Virus record (IMG/VR): IMGVR_UViG_3300008111_000002
Coordinates: 145,837 to 209,836 of that record
DNA: 64,000 nt
Reading direction: 5' to 3' (one strand)
Positions 43,742 through 61,598 of this stretch are shown here, piece after piece (position 1 is the stretch's first letter; the number at the start of each line of letters is the position of its first letter). The notes beneath the pieces were generated by a model. It did no database searches, was not told the DNA's origin, and saw nothing but the letters and a program-made list of their open reading frames with translations. The position numbers and the translations under genes were made by a program.

Positions 43742-43816
43742 TCTATCGCTCCTTGGTGTCACTGCGTTGTTGCAGTGTTTATAGTATACCCTCAGCTGCC
43801 CAAAATGTCAACCAAT

Positions 43817-44050: not shown

Positions 44051-44127
44051 AGTGGCTTCTTTCTAGAATAAAAAAGCCCGGGGAGTCCCCTCAACCCGGG
44101 CAAGGGGATCCAATCCCCGGAGCAACC

Positions 44128-44310
44128 TTAACGATATCCCTTTTGACGTATCATCAGCGTGGCCACCCACATCAAGGCCACACCCACTAGGCTGACTGCT
44201 AGACTGCACAGCAGATCGTAATCCGTAGTGCTCTGCTCAATGCCGCCTACCCCGCCTGCGGCTAGGATGATACCCATGAATACAAAAAATGCTATGACTC
44301 GATCTGACAT
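44128..44310 (-). CDS. small two-TM membrane protein
   Basis: SD AAGGAG, own promoter, two hydrophobic helices. Confidence 0.6.
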   Translation of the reverse strand: MSDRVIAFFVFMGIILAAGGVGGIEQSTTDYDLLCSLAVSLVGVALMWVATLMIRQKGYR

Positions 44311-44547
44311 GTTCTGCTCCTTTGTTTAACTGTTTACAGTATAGCTTCTCCGGCCCAACCTGTCAACCAAAATTTAATTTAATCTGATTGATCTCTCGGA
44401 CCCGGCCCCGAGGTTTCTTCTGCAGATAGAACGCGAATCCTACGCGAAAGATCTTAACGAAATGCAGTCCGCCTACTCGCTTGTATGAAATCATCTGATC
44501 GCTCCTTGATTGAAAGGGGACTTACGCTGTCGCTGCCCCGAAACTGT

Positions 44548-44844
44548 TTAATAAACTTCGTCTGCGTAACCGTAGTCTTCGTCTGTGCCGTAGCCTGCGC
44601 TGGCCATTGCTGAATCAAAATCTCCGTCCATGCTTTCGTCCGGAGCACCCCAGGCGCACTCACGTTCCTGTGCGTTGGTCAACTCCCAATCTTCCTGAAT
44701 CTTTGCCTTGGCCAACTCCACGTCCCCGCCGCACAGTTCCAGCACATCGTTATAATCTGCTGCGTCCCAGCACTCGGCAACCCAGTGGCCGCCTGCTTCG
44801 TAGTTGTCCATTGCGAACTGTTGCAGTTGTTGGATTTTGCTCAT
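44548..44844 (-). CDS. acidic hypothetical protein
   Basis: SD AAGGAG, promoter with leader hairpin. Confidence 0.65.
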   Translation of the reverse strand: MSKIQQLQQFAMDNYEAGGHWVAECWDAADYNDVLELCGGDVELAKAKIQEDWELTNAQERECAWGAPDESMDGDFDSAMASAGYGTDEDYGYADEVY

Positions 44845-44923
44845 TTTGGGCTCCTTTGTTTAGTTCACTGCGTTTGTGCAGTGTCTAAAGTATAGCGCAG
44901 GTTGTCCAATTTGTCAACCAAAA

Positions 44924-45211
44924 TCAGCAGCGATTTGTCTGGTAGGGTTTTCTTTGATTTTTAGGGAGGTGTCCCGCGCACATCTTTTCAGCGGCACGAT
45001 CCCAGTGCGGAACCTGAGCGATCAAACTTTCTCCAGGCTTTGGATCCCACGGGCGGTCACGAGGATCTCTACGATTCTCTGCCACGATGGTTTCTAAGGC
45101 TGCACAGCCTGTTAATGCACAGAGGATGAGTGCTGTACCGCACCACCTGCCTGCTGATGATCCCAAAGTAGCTTTCTGGTTACCAGCGTGTTGACCTTGT
45201 TCTCTAGCCAT
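44924..45211 (-). CDS. possible lipoprotein (start uncertain)
   Basis: ALILCALTGC lipobox-like segment. Confidence 0.35.
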   Translation of the reverse strand: MAREQGQHAGNQKATLGSSAGRWCGTALILCALTGCAALETIVAENRRDPRDRPWDPKPGESLIAQVPHWDRAAEKMCAGHLPKNQRKPYQTNRC

Positions 45212-45375
45212 TTCAGTTCCTCTTCTGTGAGTGTGTCAGTGTCCTGCTCGCCCTGCAGTACCTTAATTATAGCTTGGGTTTGATCCTGTGTCAAGCTGTG
45301 ATATTCACTTTCAACCCACTGAGTCAACTGCCGTCCCAGCTGCTGAGTTCTTCCTATCTTGCGCCAATCATTCAT
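45112..45375 (-). CDS. hypothetical protein
   Basis: 87 aa, coupled to upstream gene. Confidence 0.5.
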   Translation of the reverse strand: MNDWRKIGRTQQLGRQLTQWVESEYHSLTQDQTQAIIKVLQGEQDTDTLTEEELKWLENKVNTLVTRKLLWDHQQAGGAVQHSSSVH

Positions 45376-45745
45376 TTGAGGTTGCCTTGATTAATTCATT
45401 GCCCTCGACTATGACCAAACGCACATTGTTCATCTTGCTCTTGAGATCATCTATAAGGCTGTCACGATCACGGCCTTGGCCAAGGAATGAATCATCATCC
45501 TTGCGAAAGGCGTAGAGCTGACCTTGGTGCTGCTCTAGAGTTACTTCAATGACTGTGAGTTCATCTTCGGGGGTGGGTTCTGTCTCGAGTTCATACTTCT
45601 TCATCTGAGCCTTGAGCTGCTGCTCAGTGATGCCCATGTCTCGCATTATGGACAACATGGTGAAACGAGAAAATGCGGCATGTAGTCTCCATCCTATTGC
45701 TACGCCCAGGACCAAGACCAAAATCGTTAGAGTTGCATCATCCAT
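45368..45745 (-). CDS. N-terminally membrane-anchored hypothetical protein
   Basis: MDDATLTILVLVLGVAIGW; TAAATA upstream on the minus strand. Confidence 0.6.
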   Translation of the reverse strand: MDDATLTILVLVLGVAIGWRLHAAFSRFTMLSIMRDMGITEQQLKAQMKKYELETEPTPEDELTVIEVTLEQHQGQLYAFRKDDDSFLGQGRDRDSLIDDLKSKMNNVRLVIVEGNELIKATSNE

Positions 45746-45806
45746 AATATTATTTAATCTATTTGTGTGTATAGTGCGGGCAGCGGGGCCTTGGGCCCCA
45801 ACTGCC

Positions 45807-46151
45807 TCAATCCAGCCTAGAACCAGCGTAGGCTTGGAATCCGTATTTCTTAAACACCTGTGCTGCGGCCTCTGCGCCTGCTTCCAGTGTGTCCACATTC
45901 TGGCAACCAAACTTACTTGGGTTCCACATCTGCAGTCCCCCTGAGTAGGCTGGGCGGATATCGCATTCTTTCAAGGCCTTGCCCAACTTGGTATTTCCCT
46001 TGACGCCGTGGATGGTAACCCAGGCGAAGCCACAGGCAAACTGATCCTGACCGCCCAACCTCTCTTGGAAGAACTTGGCTGCTGCCTGATGGGCTGCGGT
46101 CTGTGCCTCTTGAACCACTGCAGGGATCTGCTCTGGAGTTACTGTGATCAT
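45807..46151 (-). CDS. conserved-looking phage hypothetical protein
   Basis: CGFAWV...Q.V...EAGAEAAA.V...GSRLD pattern. Confidence 0.65.
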   Translation of the reverse strand: MITVTPEQIPAVVQEAQTAAHQAAAKFFQERLGGQDQFACGFAWVTIHGVKGNTKLGKALKECDIRPAYSGGLQMWNPSKFGCQNVDTLEAGAEAAAQVFKKYGFQAYAGSRLD

Positions 46152-46273
46152 TGTGCGGTCTCCTTCATGATGGTCTGTGTCTTGCCCACGGCCTTGTCAA
46201 TTGCTGAGGCCACGCCCGAGATACCAACTGTGGCCACGAACATGCCTGCCACGAACGCTATCAAGATTTTCAT
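46148..46273 (-). CDS. 41-aa signal/TM peptide
   Basis: MKILIAFVAGMFVATVG...; ATGA overlap with next gene. Confidence 0.55.
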   Translation of the reverse strand: MKILIAFVAGMFVATVGISGVASAIDKAVGKTQTIMKETAQ

Positions 46274-46371
46274 CGCTCACTCCTTGTTGTCTAAGTGTTT
46301 ACAGTATACTACCTTGCCTGCCCTTTGTCAACCAAAATAAAGACCCTGCTGTGTGCAGGGCCTTTGCTTAG

Positions 46372-46626
46372 TTAATTTACAATTATAATGTTATTTGTTG
46401 CTAGTTGCTGTTTTGCTGATTGTAATGCTTTGTTAATTGCTTGTGCTTTTTGTTGTGCAGTGTCTGTAATATTGCAAATGTCCCCGGTAGCGTAAACTGC
46501 GCTGCGTTGTGTTATGTGACTGTTATTGCAGAAGCTTACTAAAATGCGTAGTGTTTTTAGCTTTTTGTTTTGTACAATTTTAGCAAAAGCTTTTTGTGCA
46601 AGTATTGCGTTAGCGTAAGTTTGCAT
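46372..46626 (-). CDS. hypothetical protein, compositionally biased (Q/A/K/N/I; no Glu, Pro or Trp)
   Basis: SD AAGGAG, own promoter and terminator. Confidence 0.6.
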   Translation of the reverse strand: MQTYANAILAQKAFAKIVQNKKLKTLRILVSFCNNSHITQRSAVYATGDICNITDTAQQKAQAINKALQSAKQQLATNNIIIVN

Positions 46627-46698
46627 TGTTGCGCTCCTTTTTGTTTAACAGTGTGTATATAATAGCACCAGCTGTCCAAAAAGTCAACCAAAATGTTC

Positions 46699-46725
46699 AA
46701 TAACCCGGCACTGCGCCGGGTTATT
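46699..46725. terminator. intrinsic terminator
   Basis: AATAACCCGGC-actgc-GCCGGGTTATT perfect 11-bp stem. Confidence 0.75.
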
Positions 46726-46733
46726 GCTAACAG

Positions 46734-47009
46734 TTACGCATACAAGTAATTGTCGGTGCAATAGTGTACAGTTTTATAAAACTTGCTTTGTGCGTCGGTG
46801 TACATGTGCATAATTGTGTCGCAAAGTTGGACTGCATTTTTATTTTGCATAAACTGTACAAGTGCTGCGTAAATTGTAACAATGTCGGTGTGTTGCTCGG
46901 CGCAGACAGTGTTGTCGGCGTTGACGTCGACAGTGCGTAAGTATTTTGCAATGTCGGCTTGCAAAAGTTGTACAATAATTGCTACGTCGGCGTTAGTAAC
47001 TTTTTGCAT
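46734..47009 (-). CDS. hypothetical protein, compositionally biased
   Basis: ATG after GGAG (MQKVTNADV...). Confidence 0.6.
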   Translation of the reverse strand: MQKVTNADVAIIVQLLQADIAKYLRTVDVNADNTVCAEQHTDIVTIYAALVQFMQNKNAVQLCDTIMHMYTDAQSKFYKTVHYCTDNYLYA

Positions 47010-47139
47010 TGTTAGCTCCGGTAGTTGCACTGCGTTTTGCAGTGTTTAAATTATAGTACCAAAACGCCGGACTGTCAACCAAAAAATTAGTTGTTAAAAA
47101 AGCAACCGGGTCAGTTGGGGGGCGTGTGCCCCCCTCCCC

Positions 47140-47619
47140 TTACTCTGCAGTTACCACGCTGCCTAGTTTGATGTTAAACACAATGCTGTCGTCCCCCGCC
47201 CTAAACTCGCTTGCCAGTGCCGCTGCCTGCGCCTCATCCCTAGTAATCTCTACACCGTTGCGTGTGTAGCGTGGCGCTTTGCGTTCCGCAGTCTTGTCCA
47301 TTGTGCATCGCACATAGTATTCGCCCTTGTGTGCGATAATGTAGGGGAATACAGCCCACTCGCCCCATGGCAAACCTGCATTCTCTGCTGGCAGTTCGCC
47401 AGTTGCTCGCTTCTCAATCACTTCCTCAATCTCGTCGTATACCTGTCCGATGATTGCGGTAAACTCTGAACGCTTAACAATAGCGTCCTGTCCCTTGCGT
47501 ACCTTCAACATACGCTCCGTGACAAACTTGACTGGCTGTTGCTTCTTGCTCAACACCAAGTCCAACAGTTGTTGTGTGTTGTTGTCTGTGCCCTGAACTA
47601 CTAGTTGTGCTATTTGCAT
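47140..47619 (-). CDS. hypothetical protein
   Basis: 159 aa, SD AAGGAG, promoter. Confidence 0.65.
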   Translation of the reverse strand: MQIAQLVVQGTDNNTQQLLDLVLSKKQQPVKFVTERMLKVRKGQDAIVKRSEFTAIIGQVYDEIEEVIEKRATGELPAENAGLPWGEWAVFPYIIAHKGEYYVRCTMDKTAERKAPRYTRNGVEITRDEAQAAALASEFRAGDDSIVFNIKLGSVVTAE

Positions 47620-47843
47620 TTGTTGCTCCTTAGTTGCCTGCGTATCGCAGTATCATTAGTATATGGCCAGCACACCAAAATGTCAACCAAAATATCAAAT
47701 GTCCCATCAGTCCGTAGGGTTATTCATCATGTTCGTTCATCGTCATCATGCAGACATTCTAACACCGTTCGTCCATTTGGTCAAGCCAAAAAAAAGCCCT
47801 GAGCACGTAGCCCAGGGCCTGCCAATCCCGGGAGCGAATCGGG

Positions 47844-48140
47844 TTAGGCAGCAACAGTTGCCGCAGCAGCAGTACTTGCTGTAGCTGTGGCAGGGTTCTT
47901 CTTCGCGGTGTAGGCGATCGCAGCTTCCACAGCAGCATTGCCAGCACCAAAGCCACGAGCCACGAGTTCTTGAACGATCTCACCTTTGGTCATTGGCTTG
48001 CCAAGATCAACCAGCTCAACACCAGTGTGTCCGTTCTTGGCCAGAATCTTGATACGCATCTGGTCATTGGCGAAACGCAGCTTGGTCTTGCCGTTAAGGG
48101 TTGAAACACCTGCTACACTAAAACGCTTGTCAGTCGACAT
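47844..48140 (-). CDS. hypothetical protein with Ala/Thr-rich tail
   Basis: 98 aa, SD GAGAGG, promoter and terminator. Confidence 0.65.
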   Translation of the reverse strand: MSTDKRFSVAGVSTLNGKTKLRFANDQMRIKILAKNGHTGVELVDLGKPMTKGEIVQELVARGFGAGNAAVEAAIAYTAKKNPATATASTAAAATVAA

Positions 48141-48385
48141 AATAATTACCTCTCTGTGTGTGAATAAAAACTACCAACCAATTTGATAGCATTTTGAGTA
48201 TACTACCAAACCATTTGTCCGTCAACCAATTATTTTTCCAAATTGTTTGGAATTGGCAACAATTGCAATAGTTCTTCCACCCTGCGATGATCTGCATCGC
48301 CCGCCCCACCGCATTCGATGGAGAAGGCAAAATTAAATGTTCTTGCCATGCTGTTTCCCTATATAGTCGTATATAGCAGCGGGGC

Positions 48386-49012
48386 CTACTGGTCCACTAA
48401 CTTCAAGGCCTCGCCGCCTTCTTTGGTCCAGCGATAGAGATCCTCATCCATACGCTCTTCCTCTTCGTATTCAGCCAGGCTCTCGCTGATGGCAAAGAAC
48501 TCATCTAGATCTTCGGGCAAGGTATCCTTGGCACCCTGACTGTCACCCCAATCTGAGTAGCAGTCATCACAGCCGTTGTCCCATACACCAGCAAAGCACA
48601 TACCTGGTTCGTAGTAGTATGCACGAACTGTGTAGCCCTGTTCAACCAACTCCTCATAGACTCCTGTGGGAGGTGCCCAGGCTGAATCAAAACTTGCAGT
48701 CATCAAGTTACCATCAGGATGAATATCCAAGGTGCCATCCTGGCCACCTACATCCCATTTAGTTCCCCAACGGCCAGACTGGAATGAATACCAATCACTG
48801 TGACCAAACTTCTCTATGTTGCTCTTAACTCGTGCTTCGTGTGCGGCCTGTTCGTCTCCTCCCACACTGCCTGCCACGGTTTCAGTCAACTCCTTGGGTG
48901 TAGGAATCACATGGTGACAGAACTCGCCACGCTCGTAGGCTTCAGCCAGCGCCTTGATCTTGGCAGGATCCTCATGACCAATTTCTATAAAGTTGTTGCA
49001 CCAATTAGGCAT
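48386..49012 (-). CDS. DUF1281/YubB-like protein
   Basis: MPNWCNN, WY......WGTKWD, FDSAWAPP, YYEPG..FAG. Confidence 0.75.
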   Translation of the reverse strand: MPNWCNNFIEIGHEDPAKIKALAEAYERGEFCHHVIPTPKELTETVAGSVGGDEQAAHEARVKSNIEKFGHSDWYSFQSGRWGTKWDVGGQDGTLDIHPDGNLMTASFDSAWAPPTGVYEELVEQGYTVRAYYYEPGMCFAGVWDNGCDDCYSDWGDSQGAKDTLPEDLDEFFAISESLAEYEEEERMDEDLYRWTKEGGEALKLVDQ

Positions 49013-49013
49013 A

Positions 49014-49241
49014 CTAGGCTCCTCGAATCATGTTTAACAAACGATCGTTCTGTGCGTCTTGATATTGACGTTGCATCACTGTGTCGAAGCGATCAATCAT
49101 ACGATCCTCAATCCTCTGTGCATTCATGTCAAAGATCTGACTCACGGTCTTGTAGATCTTGTGCTGTGCCCACGGAGTAGTCTCGGGGTCCTCTAGCACG
49201 GCCATTGCACGACGAATGTAATCAAACTCTTGAGGTGTCAT
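49014..49241 (-). CDS. hypothetical protein
   Basis: ATG after GGAGCGAAC. Confidence 0.6.
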   Translation of the reverse strand: MTPQEFDYIRRAMAVLEDPETTPWAQHKIYKTVSQIFDMNAQRIEDRMIDRFDTVMQRQYQDAQNDRLLNMIRGA

Positions 49242-49306
49242 AGTTCGCTCCTGTTTAGTTAGTGTGTATATAATAACACACACTAACCAAACTGTCAACC
49301 AAAATC

Positions 49307-49666
49307 TTATACAACCTTGACCTTGCTATAGCCTGCGGACAACAATGCCAGAGCATCTTGTGCAGTTGCTGCCATAGTCACTACACGCTTACGGTTAATA
49401 TGGCCAGTAGTTGGATAGTAACGACCACCGCCATTGCCGATGGCATTGAAGTTACCACTACCAGGATTGAATCGATTATTGTTTCCCAGAATCCAACGAT
49501 TGAGGCGACCGTCCTTGATTGATCGAAGGTGATCACTGTTTTCGAGAATGTTCATTCTCTTAGACATATCCTCGCTCCAGTAACCAAGAGCGTTGGCCAC
49601 GTCTTTAGTATAGCACAGGGGATGAGCAGCGACGTATTCGCAAATCATCTGATTTTGACTTTTCAT
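49307..49666 (-). CDS. hypothetical protein, possible N-terminal winged HTH
   Basis: ICEYVAAHP..YTKDVANALG...SKRMNILE. Confidence 0.5.
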   Translation of the reverse strand: MKSQNQMICEYVAAHPLCYTKDVANALGYWSEDMSKRMNILENSDHLRSIKDGRLNRWILGNNNRFNPGSGNFNAIGNGGGRYYPTTGHINRKRVVTMAATAQDALALLSAGYSKVKVV

Positions 49667-49732
49667 GGGTTCTCCATAAAGTGTTGTTTAGTTCAAACAG
49701 TATAACAGGGGGTTGCCCCCCTGTCAACCAAT

Positions 49733-50086
49733 TTATGCCTCTGCAAATGCCTCCAACGCTGCCTGTGCCGCACCGTCCAGCATTACGCCATCTTGTGCTT
49801 TAATCTTGTCTGCAGTTACCTTTATGCGGTATGCGTCCATCTCTGCAGTCTTTGCTTCCATAGCAGGCCACACTACGTCTTGCGGGTTAAGGTAAGCACC
49901 TGTGTAGTCTACCTTGTCCTCTTTCAGTGTAATCTCGCCTGCCTTAATGCCTTCAAACACCATGCCCCATGTAGGCTGTTGCGGACGGCCAGTAGGGCCA
50001 AACAGTTCCACTGCCTTTGCCTGCAGTTTCTCTGTTGCAATTTCATTCAAGCGACGGAGAAAGTAATTGCGTTGTTCCTGTTCCAT
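49733..50086 (-). CDS. hypothetical protein
   Basis: 117 aa, SD AGGAG, hairpin promoter. Confidence 0.65.
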   Translation of the reverse strand: MEQEQRNYFLRRLNEIATEKLQAKAVELFGPTGRPQQPTWGMVFEGIKAGEITLKEDKVDYTGAYLNPQDVVWPAMEAKTAEMDAYRIKVTADKIKAQDGVMLDGAAQAALEAFAEA

Positions 50087-50108
50087 AATACGCTCCTAAA
50101 AAGTCTGT

Positions 50109-50160
50109 CACTGCAAAATTGCAGTGTGTGTATATTAACACACACTGCCCAATCTGTCAA
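50109..50160 (-). promoter_or_regulatory. promoter with -10 inside a 10-bp inverted repeat, plus leader hairpin
   Basis: CACTGC-aaaatt-GCAGTGTGTG-tatattaa-CACACACTGC...TGTCAA. Confidence 0.85.
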
Positions 50161-50165
50161 CCGTT

Positions 50166-50477
50166 TTATGCCTCAAAATTTTCTACAATCATAATACGTC
50201 CAGCCAGCAAGTCTTCTACCAGTTGCACTGCTCGCCGCTCTGTGCCGCCAATGTGCCAGTCATAGTGCCCCATGGGAGTGCCATACTCTTTCCAGTCGTA
50301 AATCGTTGCTACTGTGCCGTCGCTAAACTCAATGCACCACTCCTGCGTGGTCTTGTCGCCACCGCCCATCCCCTCCCCCAGCAAGTCCTGCAGCTTTGCA
50401 AAGGTGGTTCCTACATAGCCCTGCAGATGTGTGCCGTTGAACTTTTCTGCAAAGTAATCGTAAACTCGTGCTTCCAT
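50166..50477 (-). CDS. conserved-looking phage hypothetical protein
   Basis: LQGY..T..KL..LLG....DKT..EW.IEF.DG.VATIYDWK.....WHIGG. Confidence 0.65.
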   Translation of the reverse strand: MEARVYDYFAEKFNGTHLQGYVGTTFAKLQDLLGEGMGGGDKTTQEWCIEFSDGTVATIYDWKEYGTPMGHYDWHIGGTERRAVQLVEDLLAGRIMIVENFEA

Positions 50478-50495
50478 GTTGCGCTCCTAGTATGT

Positions 50496-50547
50496 CACTG
50501 CGTTATTGCAGTGTGTGTATAGTAACACACACTGCCCAAAATGTCAA
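50496..50547 (-). promoter_or_regulatory. promoter with -10 inside a 10-bp inverted repeat, plus leader hairpin
   Basis: CACTGC-gttatt-GCAGTGTGTG-tatagtaa-CACACACTGC...TGTCAA. Confidence 0.85.
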
Positions 50548-50550
50548 GTG

Positions 50551-50766
50551 TTAAATTGTGCTGTACTTTCTGTATTCCTTGCCGCCCACGTTGCTGTACC
50601 ACAGCCCGTTAGTTTTTTTGTAATAACCCTGCTTGTACCAGTTTTTAATCTGTGTTGCGTGTTGCTGTCTGCCCTGCTCTGCAATAGCTTGTTCCAACGT
50701 CATTGTAGCACCTGCTGCGTCTTGTGCTGCCTGCTGTGCTTGTTGTTGTGCGTGTAGTGCTAGCAT
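50551..50766 (-). CDS. hypothetical protein (no Pro)
   Basis: SD AAGGAG; Gln/Ala-rich. Confidence 0.6.
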   Translation of the reverse strand: MLALHAQQQAQQAAQDAAGATMTLEQAIAEQGRQQHATQIKNWYKQGYYKKTNGLWYSNVGGKEYRKYSTI

Positions 50767-50783
50767 AGCTTGCTCCTTAGTTG

Positions 50784-50835
50784 CACTGCGTTATTGCAGT
50801 GTGTGTATATTAACACACACTGCCCAAAATGTCAA
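50784..50835 (-). promoter_or_regulatory. promoter with -10 inside a 10-bp inverted repeat, plus leader hairpin
   Basis: CACTGC-gttatt-GCAGTGTGTG-tatattaa-CACACACTGC...TGTCAA. Confidence 0.85.
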
Positions 50836-50844
50836 CCAAAATGT

Positions 50845-51168
50845 TTATACTTCCATGCTTGCAAGTTCGTCTTCTTGCATACCCTGCTCTGTAAAGCGCA
50901 CACCAAACCCTAGTGCATCACTAATAGCACTTTCAAATGCACTGTCTGTGTATATGTCCCATGTGCTGTTGTGCGTTACATTAACCATAACGCTTACATT
51001 GTCGTCATAAGCATTTGTCACAATGCTAATGCCTGTCACACGCACTTGCCTGTCAGCCTCGCAGCCCCACAAGCCGTCGCCAGCTGTCCAAACAGTAAAG
51101 TCGCAGTCAAAGTCTTGTGCAGTGTAGTCGCCGTCAACCTCAAACCGTGTAAGTGTAAGTTTTTGCAT
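50845..51168 (-). CDS. acidic hypothetical protein (no Pro)
   Basis: SD AGGAG; 107 aa. Confidence 0.65.
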   Translation of the reverse strand: MQKLTLTRFEVDGDYTAQDFDCDFTVWTAGDGLWGCEADRQVRVTGISIVTNAYDDNVSVMVNVTHNSTWDIYTDSAFESAISDALGFGVRFTEQGMQEDELASMEV

Positions 51169-51242
51169 TGTGTGCTCCTGTGTGTCACTGCGTTAGTGCA
51201 GTGTGTATATAATAGCACCAGCTGTTCAAAATGTCAACCAAA

Positions 51243-51401
51243 TTATTCTGCGTAACCGTCTTCTTCCCAGCCCTCGTAGGTGGCATTAACTCCCGCAGAG
51301 TTTACATCAGTCATCCCAGCAATCTCGTCTGCTGCTTCTGCTGTGTCTGCTTCAACCTGTAAAGTATATGTTACAGTCTGTGTGTAATAAAATTTAGGCA
51401 T
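51243..51401 (-). CDS. small hypothetical protein
   Basis: ATG after AGGAGCGAG (MPKFYY...). Confidence 0.55.
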   Translation of the reverse strand: MPKFYYTQTVTYTLQVEADTAEAADEIAGMTDVNSAGVNATYEGWEEDGYAE

Positions 51402-51422
51402 CTCTCGCTCCTGTAAAATTAA

Positions 51423-51462
51423 ACAGCGTGTGTATAGTAACACACGCTGTCCAAACTGTCAA
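51423..51462 (-). promoter_or_regulatory. promoter with a covaried inverted repeat around -10
   Basis: ACAGCGTGTG-tatagtaa-CACACGCTGT...TGTCAA. Confidence 0.85.
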
Positions 51463-51467
51463 CCAAT

Positions 51468-51686
51468 TTAGGCAGGCTCTCCTGAGCGACCTTGATGAAC
51501 TCGGGCAGGTCCGCCGGCAGGCAGGTGGAGTTCGAGATCAGCTTCCATGACCACGTAATAGGCTTTGAGAACTTCTAGATTGTATTCATCGGGATTGGCC
51601 TTGATCGCCATCAGCTGCTCTGAAAAGGACTGATCTTTGGCATAGGCTTGAATTCTAATGATTTCGCTGGCTTTGGAAATGTCCAT
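51468..51686 (-). CDS. hypothetical protein
   Basis: SD AAGGAG, promoter. Confidence 0.55.
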   Translation of the reverse strand: MDISKASEIIRIQAYAKDQSFSEQLMAIKANPDEYNLEVLKAYYVVMEADLELHLPAGGPARVHQGRSGEPA

Positions 51687-51753
51687 TTGTTCGCTCCTTT
51701 GTTGCTATGTGTGTATTATAGCACTATGTGTCCAAAATGTCAACCAAAATAAA

Positions 51754-51779
51754 AGCTGTGGCATTTCTGCCACAGCTTC
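51754..51779. terminator. intrinsic terminator
   Basis: AAGCTGTGGCA-tttc-TGCCACAGCTT. Confidence 0.75.
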
Positions 51780-51838
51780 CTTAGTTGCTAAATCTTAATT
51801 AAAACTGTAAATTACGCCCTGTGCGCTCTCGCTTTTTA

Positions 51839-52090
51839 CTACGACTGTCGCAGCTCCTTGCGCTTGCGGATAATGGGCTTGTCTACTTTAACTGCAATTT
51901 TAGTCTTGCGGTAGTTAATGTGTATGCCTTGTGCGCTAAACACTTCCCCCAGCACTAGCTTCATACGCTCTGCGCGGAGTTTTTGCTTGTCTGTATACAA
52001 GCTAGCGTTGGCAATATTGCGCATACTTGCATCCTGCGCTGCCCACCACTTAACAGTTGCTTCTTTAGTATCCAGTTGCTTATAACGCAT
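51839..52090 (-). CDS. basic hypothetical protein
   Basis: SD AAGGAG, promoter with leader hairpin. Confidence 0.55.
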   Translation of the reverse strand: MRYKQLDTKEATVKWWAAQDASMRNIANASLYTDKQKLRAERMKLVLGEVFSAQGIHINYRKTKIAVKVDKPIIRKRKELRQS

Positions 52091-52265
52091 AACACGCTCC
52101 TTGGGTTACACTGCACATCGCAGTATCAATACTATAACACCAGTTGTCCAATCTGTCAACCAATAAAAACCCAGTAGGCAGTAAGGACAACGGCGTAGAT
52201 CACAAGTGCGGGGATGACCTGTGACATTGTGTCACTAACAATCCATTCCGCGTATTCTTTATCGT

Positions 52266-53001: not shown

Positions 53002-53186
53002 GCGCCCCAGAATGGACTATATGGTTCGTCACATTCTACCTTAAAGTTCAGACCAGTATCTGAAATCAGCTGCTGTACGTGGGGCATGTCGTAGTCGTTC
53101 ATGACATGAATAGTTTCGCCATTCATATAGACATCATAGATGCCCATGTCCTCAAGCGAAGATAGGATCTCTTTGGGTTTGATCAT
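52998..53186 (-). CDS. hypothetical protein
   Basis: 62 aa, coupled. Confidence 0.5.
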   Translation of the reverse strand: MIKPKEILSSLEDMGIYDVYMNGETIHVMNDYDMPHVQQLISDTGLNFKVECDEPYSPFWGA

Positions 53187-53505
53187 TTGTACCTTTCAAT
53201 GCATTCATAATTCGTAGACGATCAAGATGTTCCCTAGTCGTCATTGGTTCAACCACCTCACGGACTGCTGCGCTAGTTGCCAACATGCCCTTGAGGAACT
53301 GTTGCATCTCCTTGGCCACCAGATGCTGCGATAAGTTGTTGCCTCCGTTGTAAAGGCAGTACAATCGCTGATAGCCAGGGCGATAACTCTCTATGTGATA
53401 GTTGGTCCCCAGGCTATCGTTCACCTGGGTAACCATCTCACGTATACCGTACTTGTTAATCCTCATGGTCATACCAGTTGCGAGGAAGCTTGTCTTCTTG
53501 CTCAT
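53152..53505 (-). CDS. hypothetical protein
   Basis: 117 aa. Confidence 0.5.
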   Translation of the reverse strand: MSKKTSFLATGMTMRINKYGIREMVTQVNDSLGTNYHIESYRPGYQRLYCLYNGGNNLSQHLVAKEMQQFLKGMLATSAAVREVVEPMTTREHLDRLRIMNALKGTNDQTQRDPIFA

Positions 53506-53940
53506 CCAAGTAGTCGTTGTACTCTTGCTCGTACTCCTGCCACTCTTCGTCCGTCATATCGTAGGTTTCAGGGTTGTTGAAGCCATCCATATTAGTCTCC
53601 TAGACTGTGTTGAACATGATCACAGTATACGACAGAGTCACGACTCTGTCAACCTATTTCACTTAGAAATCCCTGCAGCTTGTTCTCGGGAACATTGCGC
53701 AGCAGTTCTTCGATCGCAGTGAGGTCACCGCTCTCAACGTCAATGAGGATCTGCTCGAGGGCAGCATCAATCAAACCTTGATCTAGTTCCATGATGATTC
53801 CTTTCAGTCTGTGTGTGGAGGAAGGTCGTAGTCCGCTGGGTCTGCGGGAAACCTAGGTATGTTGTTGGGGTCCTTCATACAAACTCCTATGTTGTTTAGT
53901 GTTCGTATTATATGATAGAGTCACGACTCTGTCAAGAACT

Positions 53941-54513
53941 TTATTTGAAGCCCATGACCATGTAACGGTTAAAGCCCCAGTCAGGATATTGAAATCGTTT
54001 AGTACCTGTGAACAGTTGTTCCTTCAAAGGCCATGCAGCAGCAAAAGCCTCGTCTGACTCATAGCTGGCCACGTGATCTTCATGAGGCATATCGTTCCCT
54101 TGCAGCACTGTGAATGTATTCTCAGGGATGTTGTCGAACCACTGACGTGACTCTATGTGCTCTACGCTGGTGTTGATTATAATACTAGGCTGATGTCCCA
54201 ATGCCCACCAGTTGATGTTGTTGACGTCGTGCGTAACAGCTGAGAACTCTCCCTGCCAGTGCCACAGACGATTAACGTGTACCGCGATAGATTCGCATTC
54301 AGGATCTATGTCCCAACTGCGAACATGCTGGATGGGGATTCTACTTTGTGTGCGTAGGATGAAATTGGTAAGTGCATACCAGCCTGCGAAGATCTCTATC
54401 CTATGGCCCTGCAGCGGGGCCTGTATGTCATTGATGGAGAGTACCTGACTCAGCTTCTCAGCCAGCCAAATCTTACTGCCAATTTGACCGGATGAGAAGC
54501 TGTCCCAATTCAT
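53941..54513 (-). CDS. class I SAM-dependent methyltransferase-like protein
   Basis: GQI.SK.WL, IFAGWY, SWDIDP, INTSVEH. Confidence 0.6.
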   Translation of the reverse strand: MNWDSFSSGQIGSKIWLAEKLSQVLSINDIQAPLQGHRIEIFAGWYALTNFILRTQSRIPIQHVRSWDIDPECESIAVHVNRLWHWQGEFSAVTHDVNNINWWALGHQPSIIINTSVEHIESRQWFDNIPENTFTVLQGNDMPHEDHVASYESDEAFAAAWPLKEQLFTGTKRFQYPDWGFNRYMVMGFK

Positions 54514-55712
54514 TAGGCCTTCTCGTCGTAGATAACAGTCTGACCAAAGGGTGCTTCGTTATTACTGCCCTTGACAATGAACAAGGTATCGCAGTAGTCT
54601 TCATCACCCCAACCACCGCAGGGGTAGCCGTCTGTAAACATAATGAACTTCTTGGGCTGGATGTCGTTCTCTTTCATAAACTGCCAGTTGGCTTCAAAGT
54701 CCGTACCACCACCGCCTTGGAGATCATAAGTCAACAGTTCGTCGCCGTTGTCCTGCGTAATCTTCTGCGGATTGTAAACGTCTGTGTCAAAGCACCAGAT
54801 GTGAATGTTGTAGTCTGAATATTGATCCATGATGCCCTTGACTTCACTCAAGAACACCTTAGCATCAGCATCGCCAATTGAACCACTCATATCCAATGCA
54901 ATGGCCACGTCAATGGTCTCATCGTTCTTCATGCCTGGAAGGATAGCGCCACTGTGCATTGACTTACGATTAGGGCGAGTAAAGGAGTAGTCGTTGCGGA
55001 TGATGCTTTGAATGTTCATACGGATCAACTCACGCCAGTTCATCTTAGGCTCAGTGAGGTCTTTGATCAAACGCTGAATGCCCAACGGAGTCTTACCTGC
55101 ACCTGCGGCCGCGGCACTCTGAACCATAGCCTGCTTGATCTCATCGCGAATAGCCTGTGCTTCTTCTTTGGTAAGAACTGGAGCACCCTTGCCATCCTTA
55201 CCATCTTTGCCTGCACCCTGACCTTCGTGCTCTTGCTCGTTGATATGCTGGTCCAACAATTCGCCCAACTGATCCAGACTAATGGTCTTGACGTTCTTCA
55301 TCAGGTCGTCGTAGATCTCTTCCCAGGCCATGCCGCGATACTTGTTGTCTTGGCAAATCTTAACTTCAGTGATACGCTCGCCAATGCGGTCGTCTACAAG
55401 GATCTGGTTCACTGCGAAGTCTTGTGCGATGTTAGACATCTGACGATCACGCGAACCTACACGACCAAAGTGATCAAACACACAATGGCAAATCTCATGT
55501 GCGAACAAGAACTCTAGTTTCTTAACGCTGAGCTTCTCAACGAACTTGGTGTTGTAGTAGAAGTTGCGTCCGTCAGTTGCGGCTGTAGGGCACCAGTCGT
55601 CTGCACACTTGATCTGCATACGAGTTGCCATGTTACCAAAGAACGGTTGCTTCAGCAGAAGCCCTACACGAGCGGTAATGAGCTTTTCAACGATTGCGGG
55701 ATCTTCTTTCAT
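54513..55712 (-). CDS. DUF2201-type protein: N-terminal HExxH metallopeptidase-like domain plus C-terminal vWA domain
   Basis: TAATDG, AHEICH; MIDAS DMSGS, GGGGTDF, FTDG. Confidence 0.88.
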   Translation of the reverse strand: MKEDPAIVEKLITARVGLLLKQPFFGNMATRMQIKCADDWCPTAATDGRNFYYNTKFVEKLSVKKLEFLFAHEICHCVFDHFGRVGSRDRQMSNIAQDFAVNQILVDDRIGERITEVKICQDNKYRGMAWEEIYDDLMKNVKTISLDQLGELLDQHINEQEHEGQGAGKDGKDGKGAPVLTKEEAQAIRDEIKQAMVQSAAAAGAGKTPLGIQRLIKDLTEPKMNWRELIRMNIQSIIRNDYSFTRPNRKSMHSGAILPGMKNDETIDVAIALDMSGSIGDADAKVFLSEVKGIMDQYSDYNIHIWCFDTDVYNPQKITQDNGDELLTYDLQGGGGTDFEANWQFMKENDIQPKKFIMFTDGYPCGGWGDEDYCDTLFIVKGSNNEAPFGQTVIYDEKA

Positions 55713-55826
55713 ATGGGCTCCTTTGTCTAAGTATGTATATTATATGGCCTAGTGCCTATTCTGTCAACCAAAAAAGGTGAGTGAGGGACCCTGAACAAGT
55801 CCCCCACTCTAGCCATGGTGGAGGTC

Positions 55827-56903
55827 TTAATTCTCCATGGCCTTCAAAACATACTTACCGTATTTCTTGTGGAACTCATCAAAGTTCTTCATCTTTGTTG
55901 CGTCCAACGGCAAGTTGTAGTTAGTAAGGGCAGTCTTAGCACCCATCACAACCAACTCTGTTGGGAAGTTATCCATCATGTAGCGGAAGAAGCAGTCCGC
56001 CTGACTGTCCCAATTAGTAGCCTTCTTGTCTGCTTGATCTTTGAGCTCGTAGCACAAGCTCACAGTCAAGGAATACATGGCTGACACTTCCTTAATCTGC
56101 AGGTCCTTAACCTTGCCGCTAAGGATGTCGGGAGCCTTAGGCAGTTTACCAGCAATCTTACGATGTGCCATAAACTTAACAGCCAAGCCGTCACCAATAG
56201 CACCTGCAACCAAGTCAGTGAGCGTGTCAGTGTCAGTGTCATCGTCCTGCAGGAGATCGCTGACGAACACCCATGAACGAGGAGTTGCAAAAGCCTTAGA
56301 GCTGGACTTGGGATCAAAGTCATACAAGTCCTGCTTGGCAAAGCCTACATAACCAACAACCTCAGGATGGATCTTGTTAGCAGTAGCCCACTCTTGGAAA
56401 TCGTCAAAGTCAACTTTGGCTTCCAAGTGCAGGAAGCGGTTGGCCAACGGAGCAGGCATACGATAGGTAACACCCTTGTCGCCATCGCGGTTACCAGCCG
56501 CTACAATGTCCACGCCCTTGGGCAGGATGTATTGTCCTACACGACGGTTCAGAACCAACTGGTAGGCGGCCGCTTGGACTGCGGGAGGAGCGGAGTTGAG
56601 CTCGTCCAAGAAGATGATTGCACGGCTGTCTGGGTCAGTGGGCAATTCTGCTGGGGGTGCCCAAACCATTGTGCCTTGTTCTGCGTTGTAATAAGGGATA
56701 CCTTTGATGTCTGTAGGTTCCCAGAGTGGTAGACGAATATCAATTACTTCTCTCCCCTCGGAGTCGCCAATCTGCTTGACGATGTCACTCTTACCAATAC
56801 CGGGCGGGCCCCACAGGAACACCGGACGGCGCTTTTGAATTGCTTTTTGAATTGCCTTCTTGGCCTTCTTAGGACCAACCTGGCGAATAGAATTATCAGA
56901 CAT
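55827..56903 (-). CDS. MoxR-like AAA+ ATPase
   Basis: GPPGIGKS, FLDELN, AAGNR, LANRF, TPRSW. Confidence 0.9.
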   Translation of the reverse strand: MSDNSIRQVGPKKAKKAIQKAIQKRRPVFLWGPPGIGKSDIVKQIGDSEGREVIDIRLPLWEPTDIKGIPYYNAEQGTMVWAPPAELPTDPDSRAIIFLDELNSAPPAVQAAAYQLVLNRRVGQYILPKGVDIVAAGNRDGDKGVTYRMPAPLANRFLHLEAKVDFDDFQEWATANKIHPEVVGYVGFAKQDLYDFDPKSSSKAFATPRSWVFVSDLLQDDDTDTDTLTDLVAGAIGDGLAVKFMAHRKIAGKLPKAPDILSGKVKDLQIKEVSAMYSLTVSLCYELKDQADKKATNWDSQADCFFRYMMDNFPTELVVMGAKTALTNYNLPLDATKMKNFDEFHKKYGKYVLKAMEN

Positions 56904-56972
56904 TTAAGACCTCCAAAAAAAGTGTTTTGCTACTTGCTACTGACTGTGTCGTTCAGTTCATATATTATGCGT

Positions 56973-57623
56973 TCAAACTGCTGTCTTGTCAACGACAATC
57001 TTCACATAATTCAACTGTGTTGTATTGTCGCCACGCACGTTCTTGATCTTGCCCTTGATGGTATACTCACCGCCCACAGGCAGCTCTTTGTTGAACCAGA
57101 AGTCCACGAAGCTGTTGTTCATACGAGCGGTGATATGATATTTGTTGTAGTGAATGCTATAGCGTTGTTTGATTACCTGAATGTCACCCTCCACACGCTG
57201 ACCATCAGTGCCTGTTAGCTGATCGCTTTCACGGATCTGATCCATGAGCTGCTTGTTGGCATGATCCTTGAGCATGACGTAGGGGAGGCAGCTGACCACG
57301 CTGAGCTGATAGCTGTCTTTGGCCGAATCAAACTCCTCACGCTGAGTCAGCTTGAGCGCAGTGGTCTGAAAGTCGTTGATCTTGCCACTGAGCTGCAACA
57401 GAAGGTAACCAGTGAAGTGACGGCGAACTTCGCGGCCTTCAATGATATCATTCTCAGTTACGGGATTGGGTTCTTTGCCCATCAACCAGAACTTGACCAA
57501 GACCTTGTTGCAGCGAGTCTCGATCTTCTGAGTCTCAGTGTTGTAGACGTCGCTCTTGAAGTAGCCGCCGTTGATACGGTGTGCTGCAACTGCTGTACCC
57601 CAAACAAGATCTGCTGTTAGCAT
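56973..57623 (-). CDS. hypothetical protein, possible C-terminal OB fold
   Basis: C-terminal beta pattern ...YTIKGKIK...TTQLNYVKI. Confidence 0.5.
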   Translation of the reverse strand: MLTADLVWGTAVAAHRINGGYFKSDVYNTETQKIETRCNKVLVKFWLMGKEPNPVTENDIIEGREVRRHFTGYLLLQLSGKINDFQTTALKLTQREEFDSAKDSYQLSVVSCLPYVMLKDHANKQLMDQIRESDQLTGTDGQRVEGDIQVIKQRYSIHYNKYHITARMNNSFVDFWFNKELPVGGEYTIKGKIKNVRGDNTTQLNYVKIVVDKTAV

Positions 57624-57757
57624 TATCGCTCCTTGTGTCTAAGTATGTATATTATATGACCTCTTTTGGATTTTGTCAACCAAAAGAAAAGCCGCACTAG
57701 GCGGCTCAAAGAAATTCCCCGGGAGCGAATCGGATCTTTTACTTTGTGTAGTTCCTC

Positions 57758-58284: not shown

Positions 58285-58286
58285 AA

Positions 58287-59903: not shown

Positions 59904-59946
59904 GATTCGCTCCTAAGTAGTTTAAAGGAAGTACTAGTATACGATC

Positions 59947-61058: not shown

Positions 61059-61134
61059 AGTTCGCTCCTGTAAACACTGCACATCGCAGTCTTAACAGTA
61101 TACGATCACAGATCCAAACTGTCAACCACAAAAA

Positions 61135-61595: not shown

Positions 61596-61598
61596 ATT

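What the first reader, a model, noticed from the sequence alone, without database searches (positions are those of the whole stretch)
44111..57735. 3'-UTR elements exposing sequence complementary to the phage's own early RBSs
Seen: between stop codon and terminator of two genes the mRNA reads CCG-AUUCGCUCC-CGGG (16-nt identity at 47827-47842 and 57718-57733), a short stem with a 9-nt loop. A third reads GUUGCUCC-GGGGAUU (44111-44127). These pair with early RBS contexts GGAGCGAA(UC) (49244, 51690, 59904 with 10 nt, 61061) and GGAGCAAC (47622). Established: C-rich loop-seeded antisense RNAs repress translation at SD sites. Inference: 3'-UTR-derived sRNAs that shut down other early mRNAs.
Basis: inference. 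Interest (0 to 1): 0.7.

Follow-up and report, generated by a model that had tools for sequence, protein, structure and literature searches.

The report
Conserved phage hairpin complementary to early ribosome sites
Two early genes of this uncultured freshwater jumbo phage, and their counterparts in over a hundred related phage contigs, end in a conserved RNA hairpin whose invariant 9-base loop is the exact complement of the unusual ribosome-binding sequence shared by the phage's other early genes, which suggests, without proof, an RNA switch that turns early protein synthesis down.

Summary
The 16-nt repeat is real, at 47827-47842 and 57718-57733 on the minus (sense) strand. Each copy lies between a stop codon and an intrinsic terminator. 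The third site (44111-44127) is not the same thing: it forms no hairpin and is not conserved.

The two copies belong to a larger element: outer stem P1, 3x3 internal loop, short stem CCG/CGG and 9-nt loop AUUCGCUCC.
- The exact 16-mer occurs in at least 119 IMG/VR contigs.
- In loci chosen by a neighbouring protein, 42 of 45 distinct regions downstream of the winged-helix gene carry it.
- Five large relatives also carry the second copy, after the 98-aa gene.
- The stems covary and contain G-U pairs, so the structure is RNA of the sense strand. The loop is invariant.

The early ribosome-binding sites have the extended consensus AAGGAGCGAA, which is the loop's complement. In this genome GGAG is followed by CG at 12 of 30 early sites against 3 of 58 elsewhere. 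The figure is 48% in relatives with the hairpin and 5% in a sister clade without it. The two carrier genes never have this site.

Best reading (confidence about 0.5): an antisense-type hairpin that pairs with early ribosome-binding sites. No stable small RNA and no repression has been shown. It matches no Rfam family and no cultured phage.

The parts
47819..47851 (-). Hairpin element, copy 1, after the 98-aa gene. P1 is CUGCC (47851-47847) paired with GGCAG (47823-47819). The stop codon UAA (47846-47844) lies in the internal loop. P2 is CCCG (47843-47840) paired with CGGG (47830-47827). The loop AUUCGCUCC is 47839-47831.
   Evidence: Sequence. The unconstrained minimum-energy fold gives exactly this structure (z = -2.8). 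The covariance model hits it. Orthologous copies in relatives have different but still pairing P1 sequences.
47786..47820 (-). Intrinsic terminator of the 98-aa gene transcript, directly 3' of copy 1: an 11-bp G+C-rich stem followed by a U run.
57707..57746 (-). Hairpin element, copy 2, after the winged-helix gene. P1 is CAAAGUAAA (57746-57738) paired with UUUCUUUG (57714-57707), with one mismatch. The internal loop is AGA opposite GAA. P2 is UCCG (57734-57731) paired with CGGG (57721-57718). The loop AUUCGCUCC is 57730-57722.
   Evidence: Sequence. Constrained fold. Best covariance-model hit in the genome (26 bits). The orthologous element is present in 42 of 45 distinct unbiased relatives.
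57680..57706 (-). Intrinsic terminator of the winged-helix gene transcript, directly 3' of copy 2.
   Evidence: No metatranscriptome contig crosses it.
57758..58003 (-). Carrier gene 2: 81-aa winged helix-turn-helix protein (Pfam HTH_39). Its own ribosome-binding site, AAGGAAAC, is not of the GGAGCG type.
47844..48140 (-). Carrier gene 1: 98-aa protein of unknown family. Its own ribosome-binding site, AGAGGUAA, is not of the GGAGCG type.
59904..59913 (-). Candidate target: ribosome-binding site GGAGCGAAUC of the 155-aa gene (59436-59903). It has 9 nt complementary to the loop, 10 nt counting the adjoining stem base.
   Evidence: (-13.7 kcal/mol).
61061..61068 (-). Candidate target: ribosome-binding site GGAGCGAA of the gene starting at 61058 (GUG start).
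51690..51697 (-). Candidate target: ribosome-binding site GGAGCGAA of the 72-aa gene (51468-51686).
49244..49251 (-). Candidate target: ribosome-binding site GGAGCGAA of the 75-aa gene (49014-49241).
57626..57632 (-). Candidate target: ribosome-binding site GGAGCGA of the 216-aa gene (56973-57623), the gene immediately downstream of copy 2.
43746..52100 (-). Span that holds the remaining early start sites with GGAGCG in the Shine-Dalgarno position. CGCTCC on the + strand is at 43747, 44500, 46632, 49573, 50091, 50482, 51406 and 52095, giving 6-7 nt complementary to the loop.

Best explanation
Shown.
- The two 16-nt repeats are the tips of a conserved RNA element of about 33-41 nt, carried in the 3' untranslated region of two early mRNAs directly in front of their terminators.
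- The element is an outer stem of variable sequence, a small internal loop, a 3-4 bp G+C stem and an invariant 9-nt loop, AUUCGCUCC.
- The loop is the exact complement of the extended ribosome-binding signature (AA)GGAGCGAA that marks many early genes of this phage clade and not its other genes.

Inferred.
- The loop pairs with GGAGCG(AA) on other early mRNAs, covering the Shine-Dalgarno sequence and the spacer. A 6-9 bp G+C-rich helix would be stronger than the 4-6 bp helix with 16S rRNA, so 30S binding would be blocked.
- The loop begins with UUCG, which fits the YUNR U-turn pattern of fast-pairing antisense loops. That turn would stack the following bases, CGCUCC, ready for pairing.
- The hairpin sits beside a terminator hairpin, so it would be the most nuclease-resistant part of its mRNA. 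It would be expected to accumulate as infection proceeds.
- That would give delayed, dose-dependent shut-down of early translation.
- The two carrier genes lack the target signature and would escape.

Open. Whether the active form is the whole mRNA, a decay remnant or a processed small RNA is not known.
For: Structure.
- Native flanks fold better than chimeric flanks: -12.5 against -8.8 kcal/mol, p = 2e-21.
- Six P1 pairs change on both sides, over 35 cells, and 0 of 500 shuffles reach this. Versions with the 3' partner slid by 1-3 columns collapse.
- P1 holds many U-G pairs, which pair only on the sense strand.
- Copies after the 98-aa gene have unrelated P1 sequences that still pair, and one relative has P2 as UCG/CGA.

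Conservation.
- The 16-mer is in at least 119 viral contigs.
- 42 of 45 distinct regions, chosen without reference to the motif, carry the exact hairpin. Two have the loop UAGUCGCUCC.
- Both positions are conserved in five large relatives, 7-9 kb apart.
- Tandem double hairpins with the same loop on different stems occur.

Target signature.
- In this genome GGAG is followed by CG at 12 of 30 early sites against 3 of 58 elsewhere.
- In relatives 456 of 953 and 245 of 514 sites have GGAGCG, and AAGGAGCGAA is the top 10-mer.
- A sister clade without the winged-helix gene and hairpin has 3 of 63.
- Distant orthologues of the 98-aa gene have a plain terminator, and their loci lack the GGAGCG consensus (at most one such site each).
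- Loop-to-start-site duplex energy averages -7.2 for early genes against -4.0 for the rest, p = 1e-7. 12 of 40 early sites reach -10 kcal/mol against 5 of 213.

Other.
- None of about 64 winged-helix and about 18 98-aa orthologues has a GGAGCG site.
- The YUNR U-turn is described in PMC6562991.
- The loop is mostly unpaired in ensemble folds, mean 0.77.
Against: - There is no direct evidence of pairing, repression or a stable 3' fragment. The only RNA data are sparse metatranscriptome contigs.
- Against random loops that keep CUCC, the mean duplex energy is not exceptional: 40 of 300 do as well. The argument therefore rests on the exact match to the top-ranked extension, roughly 1 in 64 to 1 in 256.
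- Co-occurrence of the hairpin and the signature across clades may be a single evolutionary event.
- The two relatives with a changed loop show no compensating change in their ribosome-binding sites.
- Only about 12-20 of 40 early genes in this genome carry the signature.
- Two carrier transcripts would have to titrate many mRNAs made from consensus promoters.
- Copy 2 in this genome has a weak P1 and is not the minimum-energy fold.
- Nested cofolding cannot model loop-to-strand kissing, so the energetics are crude.
Confidence: 0.5

Rival explanations
1. The hairpin is a protein-binding site. A phage or host RNA-binding protein recognises the invariant loop on a variable stem and controls stability, 3'-end formation or localisation of the two carrier mRNAs. 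The match to the ribosome-binding signature would be incidental, or reflect some indirect link.
For: An invariant loop on variable stems, sometimes in tandem, is also the hallmark of protein-binding hairpins and protein sponges. The semi-conserved purine-rich internal loop could be a protein contact. One carrier encodes a winged-helix protein.
Against: It does not explain why the loop is the exact complement of the clade-specific early signature, nor why the two are present and absent together. A protein cannot read both a sequence and its complement. No candidate protein was identified.
Confidence: 0.2
2. The hairpin acts in cis only. On transcripts that read through the terminator, the loop pairs with the ribosome-binding site of the next gene about 95-200 nt downstream. 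Only transcripts started at that gene's own promoter would then be translated.
For: The gene downstream of the winged-helix copy has GGAGCGA(A) in this genome and in most relatives, with 7-8 nt matches in about 40 of 60 callable cases.
Against: The gene downstream of copy 1 has only GGAGC, a 5-nt match, here and in relatives. A strong terminator and a consensus promoter lie in between. No RNA contig crosses the terminator. The signature is spread over a dozen unlinked early genes.
Confidence: 0.1
3. The pairing is real but has a positive or protective role. The hairpin would shield early ribosome-binding sites from a nuclease that cuts at the Shine-Dalgarno sequence, as T4 RegB does at GGAG followed by an extended consensus, or would otherwise stabilise early mRNAs.
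For: T4 shows that early genes can share an extended Shine-Dalgarno signature read by a dedicated factor, and that secondary structure protects against RegB (PMC3014915). The complementarity evidence is the same as for the main explanation.
Against: No RegB or RegA homologue was found in the record, although it is only about 60% complete and the control genomes could not validate the search. Covering the Shine-Dalgarno sequence would itself block initiation.
Confidence: 0.08
4. The hairpin is an antitermination or termination-modulating signal of the nut or put kind. It would load a factor onto RNA polymerase just before the terminator.
For: It always lies immediately upstream of an intrinsic terminator. 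The loop core CGCUC resembles the start of the boxA consensus CGCUCUUA. That resemblance is recalled from established lambda biology and was not tested here.
Against: The loop lacks the U-rich half of boxA. The element sits at the ends of genes rather than in promoter-proximal leaders. In some relatives the loop is on the terminator hairpin itself. The ribosome-binding-site complementarity is left unexplained.
Confidence: 0.05
5. The shared 8-9 bp is a double-stranded DNA operator, for example for the winged-helix protein, present at early gene starts and, inverted, after the two carrier genes.
For: The same 8-mer occurs in both orientations in the early region only. One carrier encodes a DNA-binding-type fold.
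Against: A duplex operator does not need flanking stems that covary, change length and use G-U pairs. The orientation is rigidly tied to the transcribed strand in every copy. At gene starts the motif keeps Shine-Dalgarno spacing to the start codon rather than a fixed distance from the promoter.
Confidence: 0.05

Closest known systems
Loop-seeded antisense RNAs of plasmids, phages and toxin-antitoxin systems (CopA, RNA I, Sok, pIP501 RNAIII, P1/P7 c4 RNA)
   Same: A hairpin loop of 6-9 nt begins with a YUNR pattern (here UUCG). The upper stem is interrupted by an internal loop. The loop is complementary to a ribosome-binding region. Like c4, it is phage-encoded and made from the same early transcription as its proposed targets.
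   Different: It is encoded in trans, so complementarity is limited to 6-10 nt. It is aimed at a shared signature on many genes rather than one cognate mRNA. It has no sequence or model similarity to the Rfam C4 family or any other.
3'-UTR-derived small RNAs of bacteria (CpxQ, SroC, DapZ type) and 3'-UTR-derived non-coding RNA candidates in virulent Pseudomonas phages (PMC10914365)
   Same: It lies between a stop codon and the mRNA's own terminator, so any stable 3' remnant would carry the seed plus a terminator hairpin and U tail.
   Different: No processed species has been shown here. The seed is in a hairpin loop rather than a single-stranded 5' stretch. Dependence on a chaperone is unknown.
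C-rich-loop regulators that mask Shine-Dalgarno sequences (Staphylococcus RNAIII, RsaE; alpha-proteobacterial anti-SD loop RNAs)
   Same: A pyrimidine-rich loop containing CUCC is presented for pairing with GGAG-type Shine-Dalgarno sequences. There is a weak, sub-threshold Rfam resemblance to the suhB/mmgR model (24 bits against a cut-off of 41).
   Different: The loop extends 4-5 nt beyond the anti-Shine-Dalgarno core to match a phage-specific spacer, CGAA(U). That would discriminate phage early genes from host genes. It is not a member of those families by model score.
T4 RegB and RegA shut-off of early gene expression (PMC3014915)
   Same: Proposed outcome: early genes carry a recognisable ribosome-binding signature (in T4, GGAG followed by RAYARAA) that a phage factor uses to silence them after the early phase.
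   Different: There the factor is a protein, a nuclease or a repressor. Here the candidate factor is an RNA loop. No RegA or RegB homologue was detected.

Membership tests
3'-UTR-derived small RNA | Encoded between the stop codon and the terminator of an mRNA, and shares that terminator | tested here: met
   Both copies, and the orthologous copies in relatives.
3'-UTR-derived small RNA | Accumulates as a discrete stable RNA, made by processing or from an internal promoter | tested here: inconclusive
   Only assembled metatranscriptome contigs were available. They cover the carrier genes, end at 57719 or 57721 in two studies, and do not cross the terminator. No small-RNA library exists. No consensus promoter is visible just upstream of the element.
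3'-UTR-derived small RNA | Regulates targets through a conserved seed | not testable with these tools
   Complementarity and conservation of the seed are shown. Regulation needs an experiment.
Loop-seeded (kissing-type) antisense RNA | Recognition loop of about 5-9 nt on a stable stem, with a YUNR motif | tested here: met
   The 9-nt loop AUUCGCUCC contains UUCG at positions 2-5. The stem is supported by covariation. The motif definition is from PMC6562991. U-turn geometry itself was not tested.
Loop-seeded (kissing-type) antisense RNA | Transcribed from the strand opposite its target, giving full complementarity | tested here: not met
   The element and its candidate targets are on the same strand at different loci. 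Complementarity is 6-10 nt.
P1/P7 C4 antisense RNA and all other Rfam 15 families | Score at or above the family's gathering threshold | tested here: not met
   Only two tRNAs pass in the window. Permissive scans of three loci containing the element gave only sub-threshold small-RNA look-alikes with E of at least 0.09.
nut-type antitermination site (boxA plus boxB) | Linear boxA consensus CGCUCUU(U)A followed by a boxB hairpin, in a promoter-proximal leader | tested here: not met
   The loop has CGCUCC without the U-rich half. The motif lies inside the hairpin loop rather than upstream of it, and the element sits at 3' ends of genes. The consensus was taken from general knowledge of lambda.
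Intrinsic terminator | G+C-rich hairpin immediately followed by a U run | tested here: not met
   In the window the element is separate from, and upstream of, the terminator hairpin. In two relatives (L083, L084) the loop does sit on a terminator-like hairpin.

The most novel reading that the evidence does not exclude
A whole clade of abundant freshwater jumbo phages may tag its early genes with an 8-nt 'address' in the ribosome-binding site, GGAGCGAA. The phages would read that address with an RNA hairpin carried at the 3' end of two early mRNAs. Early translation would then be switched off globally by RNA-RNA pairing, an RNA-only counterpart of T4 RegA and RegB. The hairpin and the address would have evolved together.
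Probability: 0.4. Interest if true: 0.8.

Novelty: new variant of a known kind. Interest (0 to 1): 0.66.

Why it matters
Temporal shut-off of early genes in large virulent phages is understood mainly through proteins. Regulatory RNAs of virulent phages are only beginning to be catalogued, and almost none has a known target.

Here comparative sequence alone gives three things:
- a well-defined, structurally supported RNA motif;
- a specific predicted target set;
- a simple testable rule of loop against ribosome-binding-site complementarity.

The phage family is uncultured but very common in lakes: at least 596 related loci were found with one neighbouring protein.

If the rule holds, it would show that a phage can distinguish its own early messages from host messages with a short extension of the Shine-Dalgarno sequence. 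It would also supply a compact, orthogonal translational off-switch.

If it fails, the element remains a new conserved phage RNA motif that needs another explanation.

Tried and rejected
- **Known RNA families.** Rfam at gathering threshold on the window, and at permissive threshold on three loci with the element, gave no family.
- **tRNA remnant idea.** Only two true tRNAs are present, far from the elements. The hit at 2021 lies inside coding sequence.
- **Cultured relatives.** No near DNA match exists in 50,697 phage records, and the element plus terminator finds nothing. The closest cultured phages are PA5oct-like, at 46-54% protein identity. Their genes are tightly packed, so no comparison was possible.
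- **Third element.** It was rejected.
- **Self-pairing.** The hairpin does not match its own gene's ribosome-binding site, because the carriers lack the signature.
- **Compensatory evolution.** The only loop variant found, UAGUCGCUCC in two loci, comes with unchanged ribosome-binding sites, so this was uninformative.
- **MAFFT plus RNAalifold** on unequal-length flanks recovered only the invariant short stem. P1 had to be tested with equal-geometry sequences and with chimeric-flank controls.
- **Nested cofolding.** It cannot represent a loop-to-strand kiss. It gave sensible gains for the weakly folded copy 2 and none for the stable copy 1.
- **Random-loop control.** The mean duplex energy was not significant, with 40 of 300 random loops doing as well.
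- **RNA data.** Two read-laying runs on metatranscriptome contigs were too sparse to map ends.
- **Protein families.** Pfam and PHROGs gave no function for the 98-aa protein or for most candidate target genes.
- **Phage translation factors.** No bS21, RegB or RegA gene was found in the record. It is about 60% complete, and the RegA and RegB control searches rang nowhere, so this is weak.
- **Literature.** Searches by sequence and by concept found no description of this motif.

Full report
**What is in the window**

The window is the last 64 kb of a 209,836-bp virus record with 36.8% G+C. CheckV rates it about 60% complete. Its DNA occurs in many lake and freshwater metagenomes.

From about 43 kb to the end, every gene is on the minus strand. 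The region is a classic early region:
- dozens of small genes;
- at least 24 near-consensus sigma-70 promoters of the form TTGGTTGACA-N17-TATAAT;
- frequent intrinsic terminators.

There is no near relative among 50,697 deposited phage genomes. The closest cultured phages are PA5oct-like jumbo phages, at 46-54% protein identity.

**Checking the observation**

The minus strand reads CCGATTCGCTCCCGGG exactly at 47827-47842 and 57718-57733.
- Copy 1 begins one base after the stop codon of a 98-aa gene (47844-48140).
- Copy 2 lies 24 nt after the stop of an 81-aa winged-helix gene (57758-58003; Pfam HTH_39).
- Each copy is followed at once by a G+C-rich hairpin and a U run.

The third proposed element (44111-44127) fails. 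GUUGCUCC is not displayed in a hairpin loop, and the region folds no better than shuffled sequence. The orthologues of the preceding 60-aa gene in relatives have nothing similar downstream.

**The element is larger than 16 nt and widely conserved**

Nearly all show the same layout:
- the stop codon of an orthologue of the winged-helix gene;
- an outer stem P1;
- a 3x3 purine-rich internal loop;
- the short stem CCG/CGG;
- the loop AUUCGCUCC;
- the return strand of P1, then a terminator and a consensus promoter.

Gene order around it is the same as in the window: AAA ATPase, small membrane protein, winged-helix gene, element, 216-aa gene, MoxR-type ATPase.

To avoid selecting on the motif, I fetched 80 loci through the MoxR-type protein; at least 596 such loci exist. 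Among 45 distinct regions downstream of the winged-helix gene, 42 carry the exact hairpin. Two have the loop UAGUCGCUCC, and one was a mis-aligned hit.

A covariance model built from 19 equal-geometry copies finds exactly two copies in this genome. It also finds two good copies in each of five large related contigs, 7-9 kb apart. The second copy always follows the orthologue of the 98-aa gene. Both positions in the window are therefore orthologously conserved.

**It is an RNA structure of the sense strand**

- With the short stem imposed, native 5' and 3' flanks fold to -12.5 kcal/mol on average. Chimeras of flanks from different phages reach -8.8 (p = 2e-21).
- On the equal-geometry alignment, six of ten P1 pairs change on both sides, over 35 cells. 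No shuffle out of 500 reaches this. Sliding the partner column by one to three positions destroys the signal.
- That alignment was selected for at least six P1 pairs, which inflates the percentage paired. The covariation and the chimera test do not depend on that choice.
- The copies after the 98-aa gene are the clearest case. Their P1 strands are unrelated in sequence between phages (CUGCC/GGCAG, CAGCUUA/UAAGCUG, GUUACCG/CGGUAAC, GCUAUGGC/GCUGUAGC, GUUGCCG/CGGCAAC) yet always pair.
- In those copies the 5' strand overlaps the last codons, and the stop codon sits in the internal loop. One relative changes P2 to UCG/CGA.
- P1 contains many U-G pairs, which would be C-A mismatches on the other strand.
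- Other hairpins with the same loop on quite different stems occur in tandem with the standard one. In two relatives they form the terminator-like hairpin itself.

In short, the loop is invariant, and the stems are free to change as long as they pair.

**The loop matches a clade-specific signature of early ribosome-binding sites**

In this genome I took every GGAG that lies 4-10 nt before a start codon of an open frame of at least 40 codons.
- GGAG is followed by CG at 12 of 30 sites in the early region, against 3 of 58 elsewhere. G+C content is only 37%.
- Thirteen early start sites carry GGAGCG. Nine extend to at least GGAGCGA, four to GGAGCGAA, and one to GGAGCGAAUC.

In relatives that have the hairpin:
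- 456 of 953 and 245 of 514 distinct GGAG sites are GGAGCG;
- the commonest 10-mers are AAGGAGCGAA and UAGGAGCGAA.

The loop AUUCGCUCC is therefore the reverse complement of the top-ranked extension of the Shine-Dalgarno sequence. The conserved 3' end of 16S rRNA would favour GGAGGU, so it cannot explain that extension (established knowledge).

A sister clade lacks the winged-helix gene and the hairpin; its MoxR protein is 73-76% identical. It has GGAGCG at only 3 of 63 sites. Two distant orthologues of the 98-aa gene are followed by a plain terminator, in loci without the GGAGCG consensus.

The two carrier genes themselves never use the signature. About 64 winged-helix orthologues have AAGGAAAC-type sites. 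About 18 orthologues of the 98-aa gene have AGAGGUAA-type sites.

Duplex energies between the loop and 25-nt start regions average -7.2 kcal/mol for 40 early genes and -4.0 for 213 others (p = 1e-7). Twelve of 40 early genes reach -10 kcal/mol, against 5 of 213.

**Cautions**

- Random loops that keep CUCC reach the same mean energy in 40 of 300 trials. The statistical weight therefore lies in the exact match to the commonest extension, not in energies.
- The presence and absence pattern across clades may be a single event.
- The only loop variant found is not accompanied by changed ribosome-binding sites.
- Copy 2 in this genome has a mismatched P1 and is not the minimum-energy fold.
- Across 121 distinct elements, the loop is fully open in 74 minimum-energy folds, and its bases have a mean unpaired probability of 0.77.

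**RNA evidence**

Two lake metatranscriptomes hold 7-14% of the sampled words of a 5-kb early stretch but 42-51% of the winged-helix gene stretch. A third holds 25% of the winged-helix stretch.

Their contigs cover the winged-helix gene and the 98-aa gene. In two independent studies a contig ends at 57719 or 57721, the 3' edge of the short stem. None crosses the terminator or covers the next gene.

This shows uneven coverage that peaks on the two carrier genes in RNA libraries, and it is compatible with a 3' end at the element or the terminator. Depths of 3-6 and assembled contigs cannot show a processed small RNA.

**Mechanism**

The most economical reading is a trans-acting hairpin of the antisense type. 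The loop nucleates on GGAGCG(AA) of early mRNAs and occludes the Shine-Dalgarno sequence and spacer.

The loop starts with UUCG, a YUNR pattern. In characterised antisense systems that pattern forms a U-turn that pre-stacks the following bases for rapid pairing (PMC6562991). Here those bases are CGCUCC. A short upper stem above an internal loop is also typical of such RNAs.

Because the element abuts the terminator hairpin, it should survive 3'-to-5' decay and build up during the early phase. That would give delayed negative feedback on early translation.

This parallels in outcome, but not in mechanism, the T4 proteins RegB and RegA. RegB cuts GGAG followed by an extended early-gene consensus, and RegA is a translational repressor (PMC3014915). 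No RegA, RegB or bS21 homologue was found in this incomplete record.

What is shown: the structure, its conservation, the complementarity, and the restriction of the signature to early genes. What is inferred: pairing, repression, accumulation and timing.

**Rivals**

- **Protein-binding hairpin.** It fits the invariant loop and the tandem copies, but not the complementarity.
- **Purely cis action on the next gene.** It fits copy 2 but not copy 1.
- **Protective pairing.** It uses the same evidence with the opposite sign.
- **nut-like antitermination and a duplex-DNA operator.** Both fit poorly with the placement, the G-U pairs and the covarying stems.
- **Chance.** It is excluded by the conservation.

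**Comparison with what is known, and novelty**

The element scores with no Rfam family. It is absent from cultured phages. Full-text searches by sequence or by concept did not find it.

It works like loop-seeded antisense RNAs and like C-rich-loop regulators that mask the Shine-Dalgarno sequence. It sits where 3'-UTR-derived small RNAs sit, and such candidates have recently been listed for virulent Pseudomonas phages without targets (PMC10914365).

It differs from these in three ways:
- it is encoded in trans;
- it is aimed at a shared signature on many early genes;
- it pairs beyond the generic anti-Shine-Dalgarno core with a phage-specific spacer.

I rate it a new variant of a known kind. 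It is well supported as a conserved RNA motif and moderately supported as an anti-ribosome-binding-site regulator.

Noticed in passing
window 45789, 48385, 54420, 62006, 62272, 62547, 62769 (minus strand): The G+C-rich 10-mer GCCCCGCTGC, usually preceded by AG, occurs seven times exactly. All copies are on the minus strand and inside the early region, and there are none elsewhere in the 210-kb record. Several sit 10-35 nt before start codons that lack a Shine-Dalgarno sequence, and are followed by TATA-rich sequence. The same motif follows the terminator of the 98-aa gene in relatives L121 and L212. It is a candidate phage-specific promoter or operator.
   Followed up: partly
window 49699-49727, 53624-53652, 53907-53935, 59399-59427; also 50121-50148, 50508-50535, 50796-50823: Many of the consensus early promoters have a perfect or near-perfect palindrome in the 17-nt spacer. 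Three have a 28-nt palindrome centred on the -10 box. These may be repressor operators or hairpins at the 5' end of the transcript.
   Followed up: no
window about 43759-52167, repeat family D1: At least eight early transcription units share a hairpin of the form CACUGC-loop-GCAGUG. It lies directly after the promoter and before the ribosome-binding site, within a repeated promoter-leader cassette of 60-90 nt. This recalls the promoter-stem-loop cassettes of T4-type phages.
   Followed up: no
window 62458-62507: Five tandem copies of the 10-bp unit CTCTATAATT lie inside a 417-nt gene-free gap (62158-62574).
   Followed up: no
window 58056-58085: A perfect 10-bp inverted repeat, GCACTCTTGA ... 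TCAAGAGTGC, lies just upstream of the winged-helix gene and overlaps a weak promoter-like site. It may be an operator for autoregulation.
   Followed up: no
window 61509-61675 (minus strand): tRNA-Leu(UAA) and tRNA-Met(CAU) genes lie side by side within the early region.
   Followed up: no
window 54513-59369: A conserved early gene block encodes an AAA ATPase (360 aa), a MoxR/AAA_5-type ATPase (358 aa) and a DUF2201 metallopeptidase-like plus VWA-like protein (399 aa). Homologues occur in PA5oct-, Atu_ph07- and Rak2-like jumbo phages, where they are variously annotated as hydrolase or homing endonuclease.
   Followed up: partly
L003, L038, L083/L172, L084 (relatives): Some relatives carry two anti-ribosome-binding-site hairpins in tandem after the winged-helix gene. 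In two of them the same loop sits on the terminator-like hairpin itself. This suggests selection for loop dosage.
   Followed up: partly
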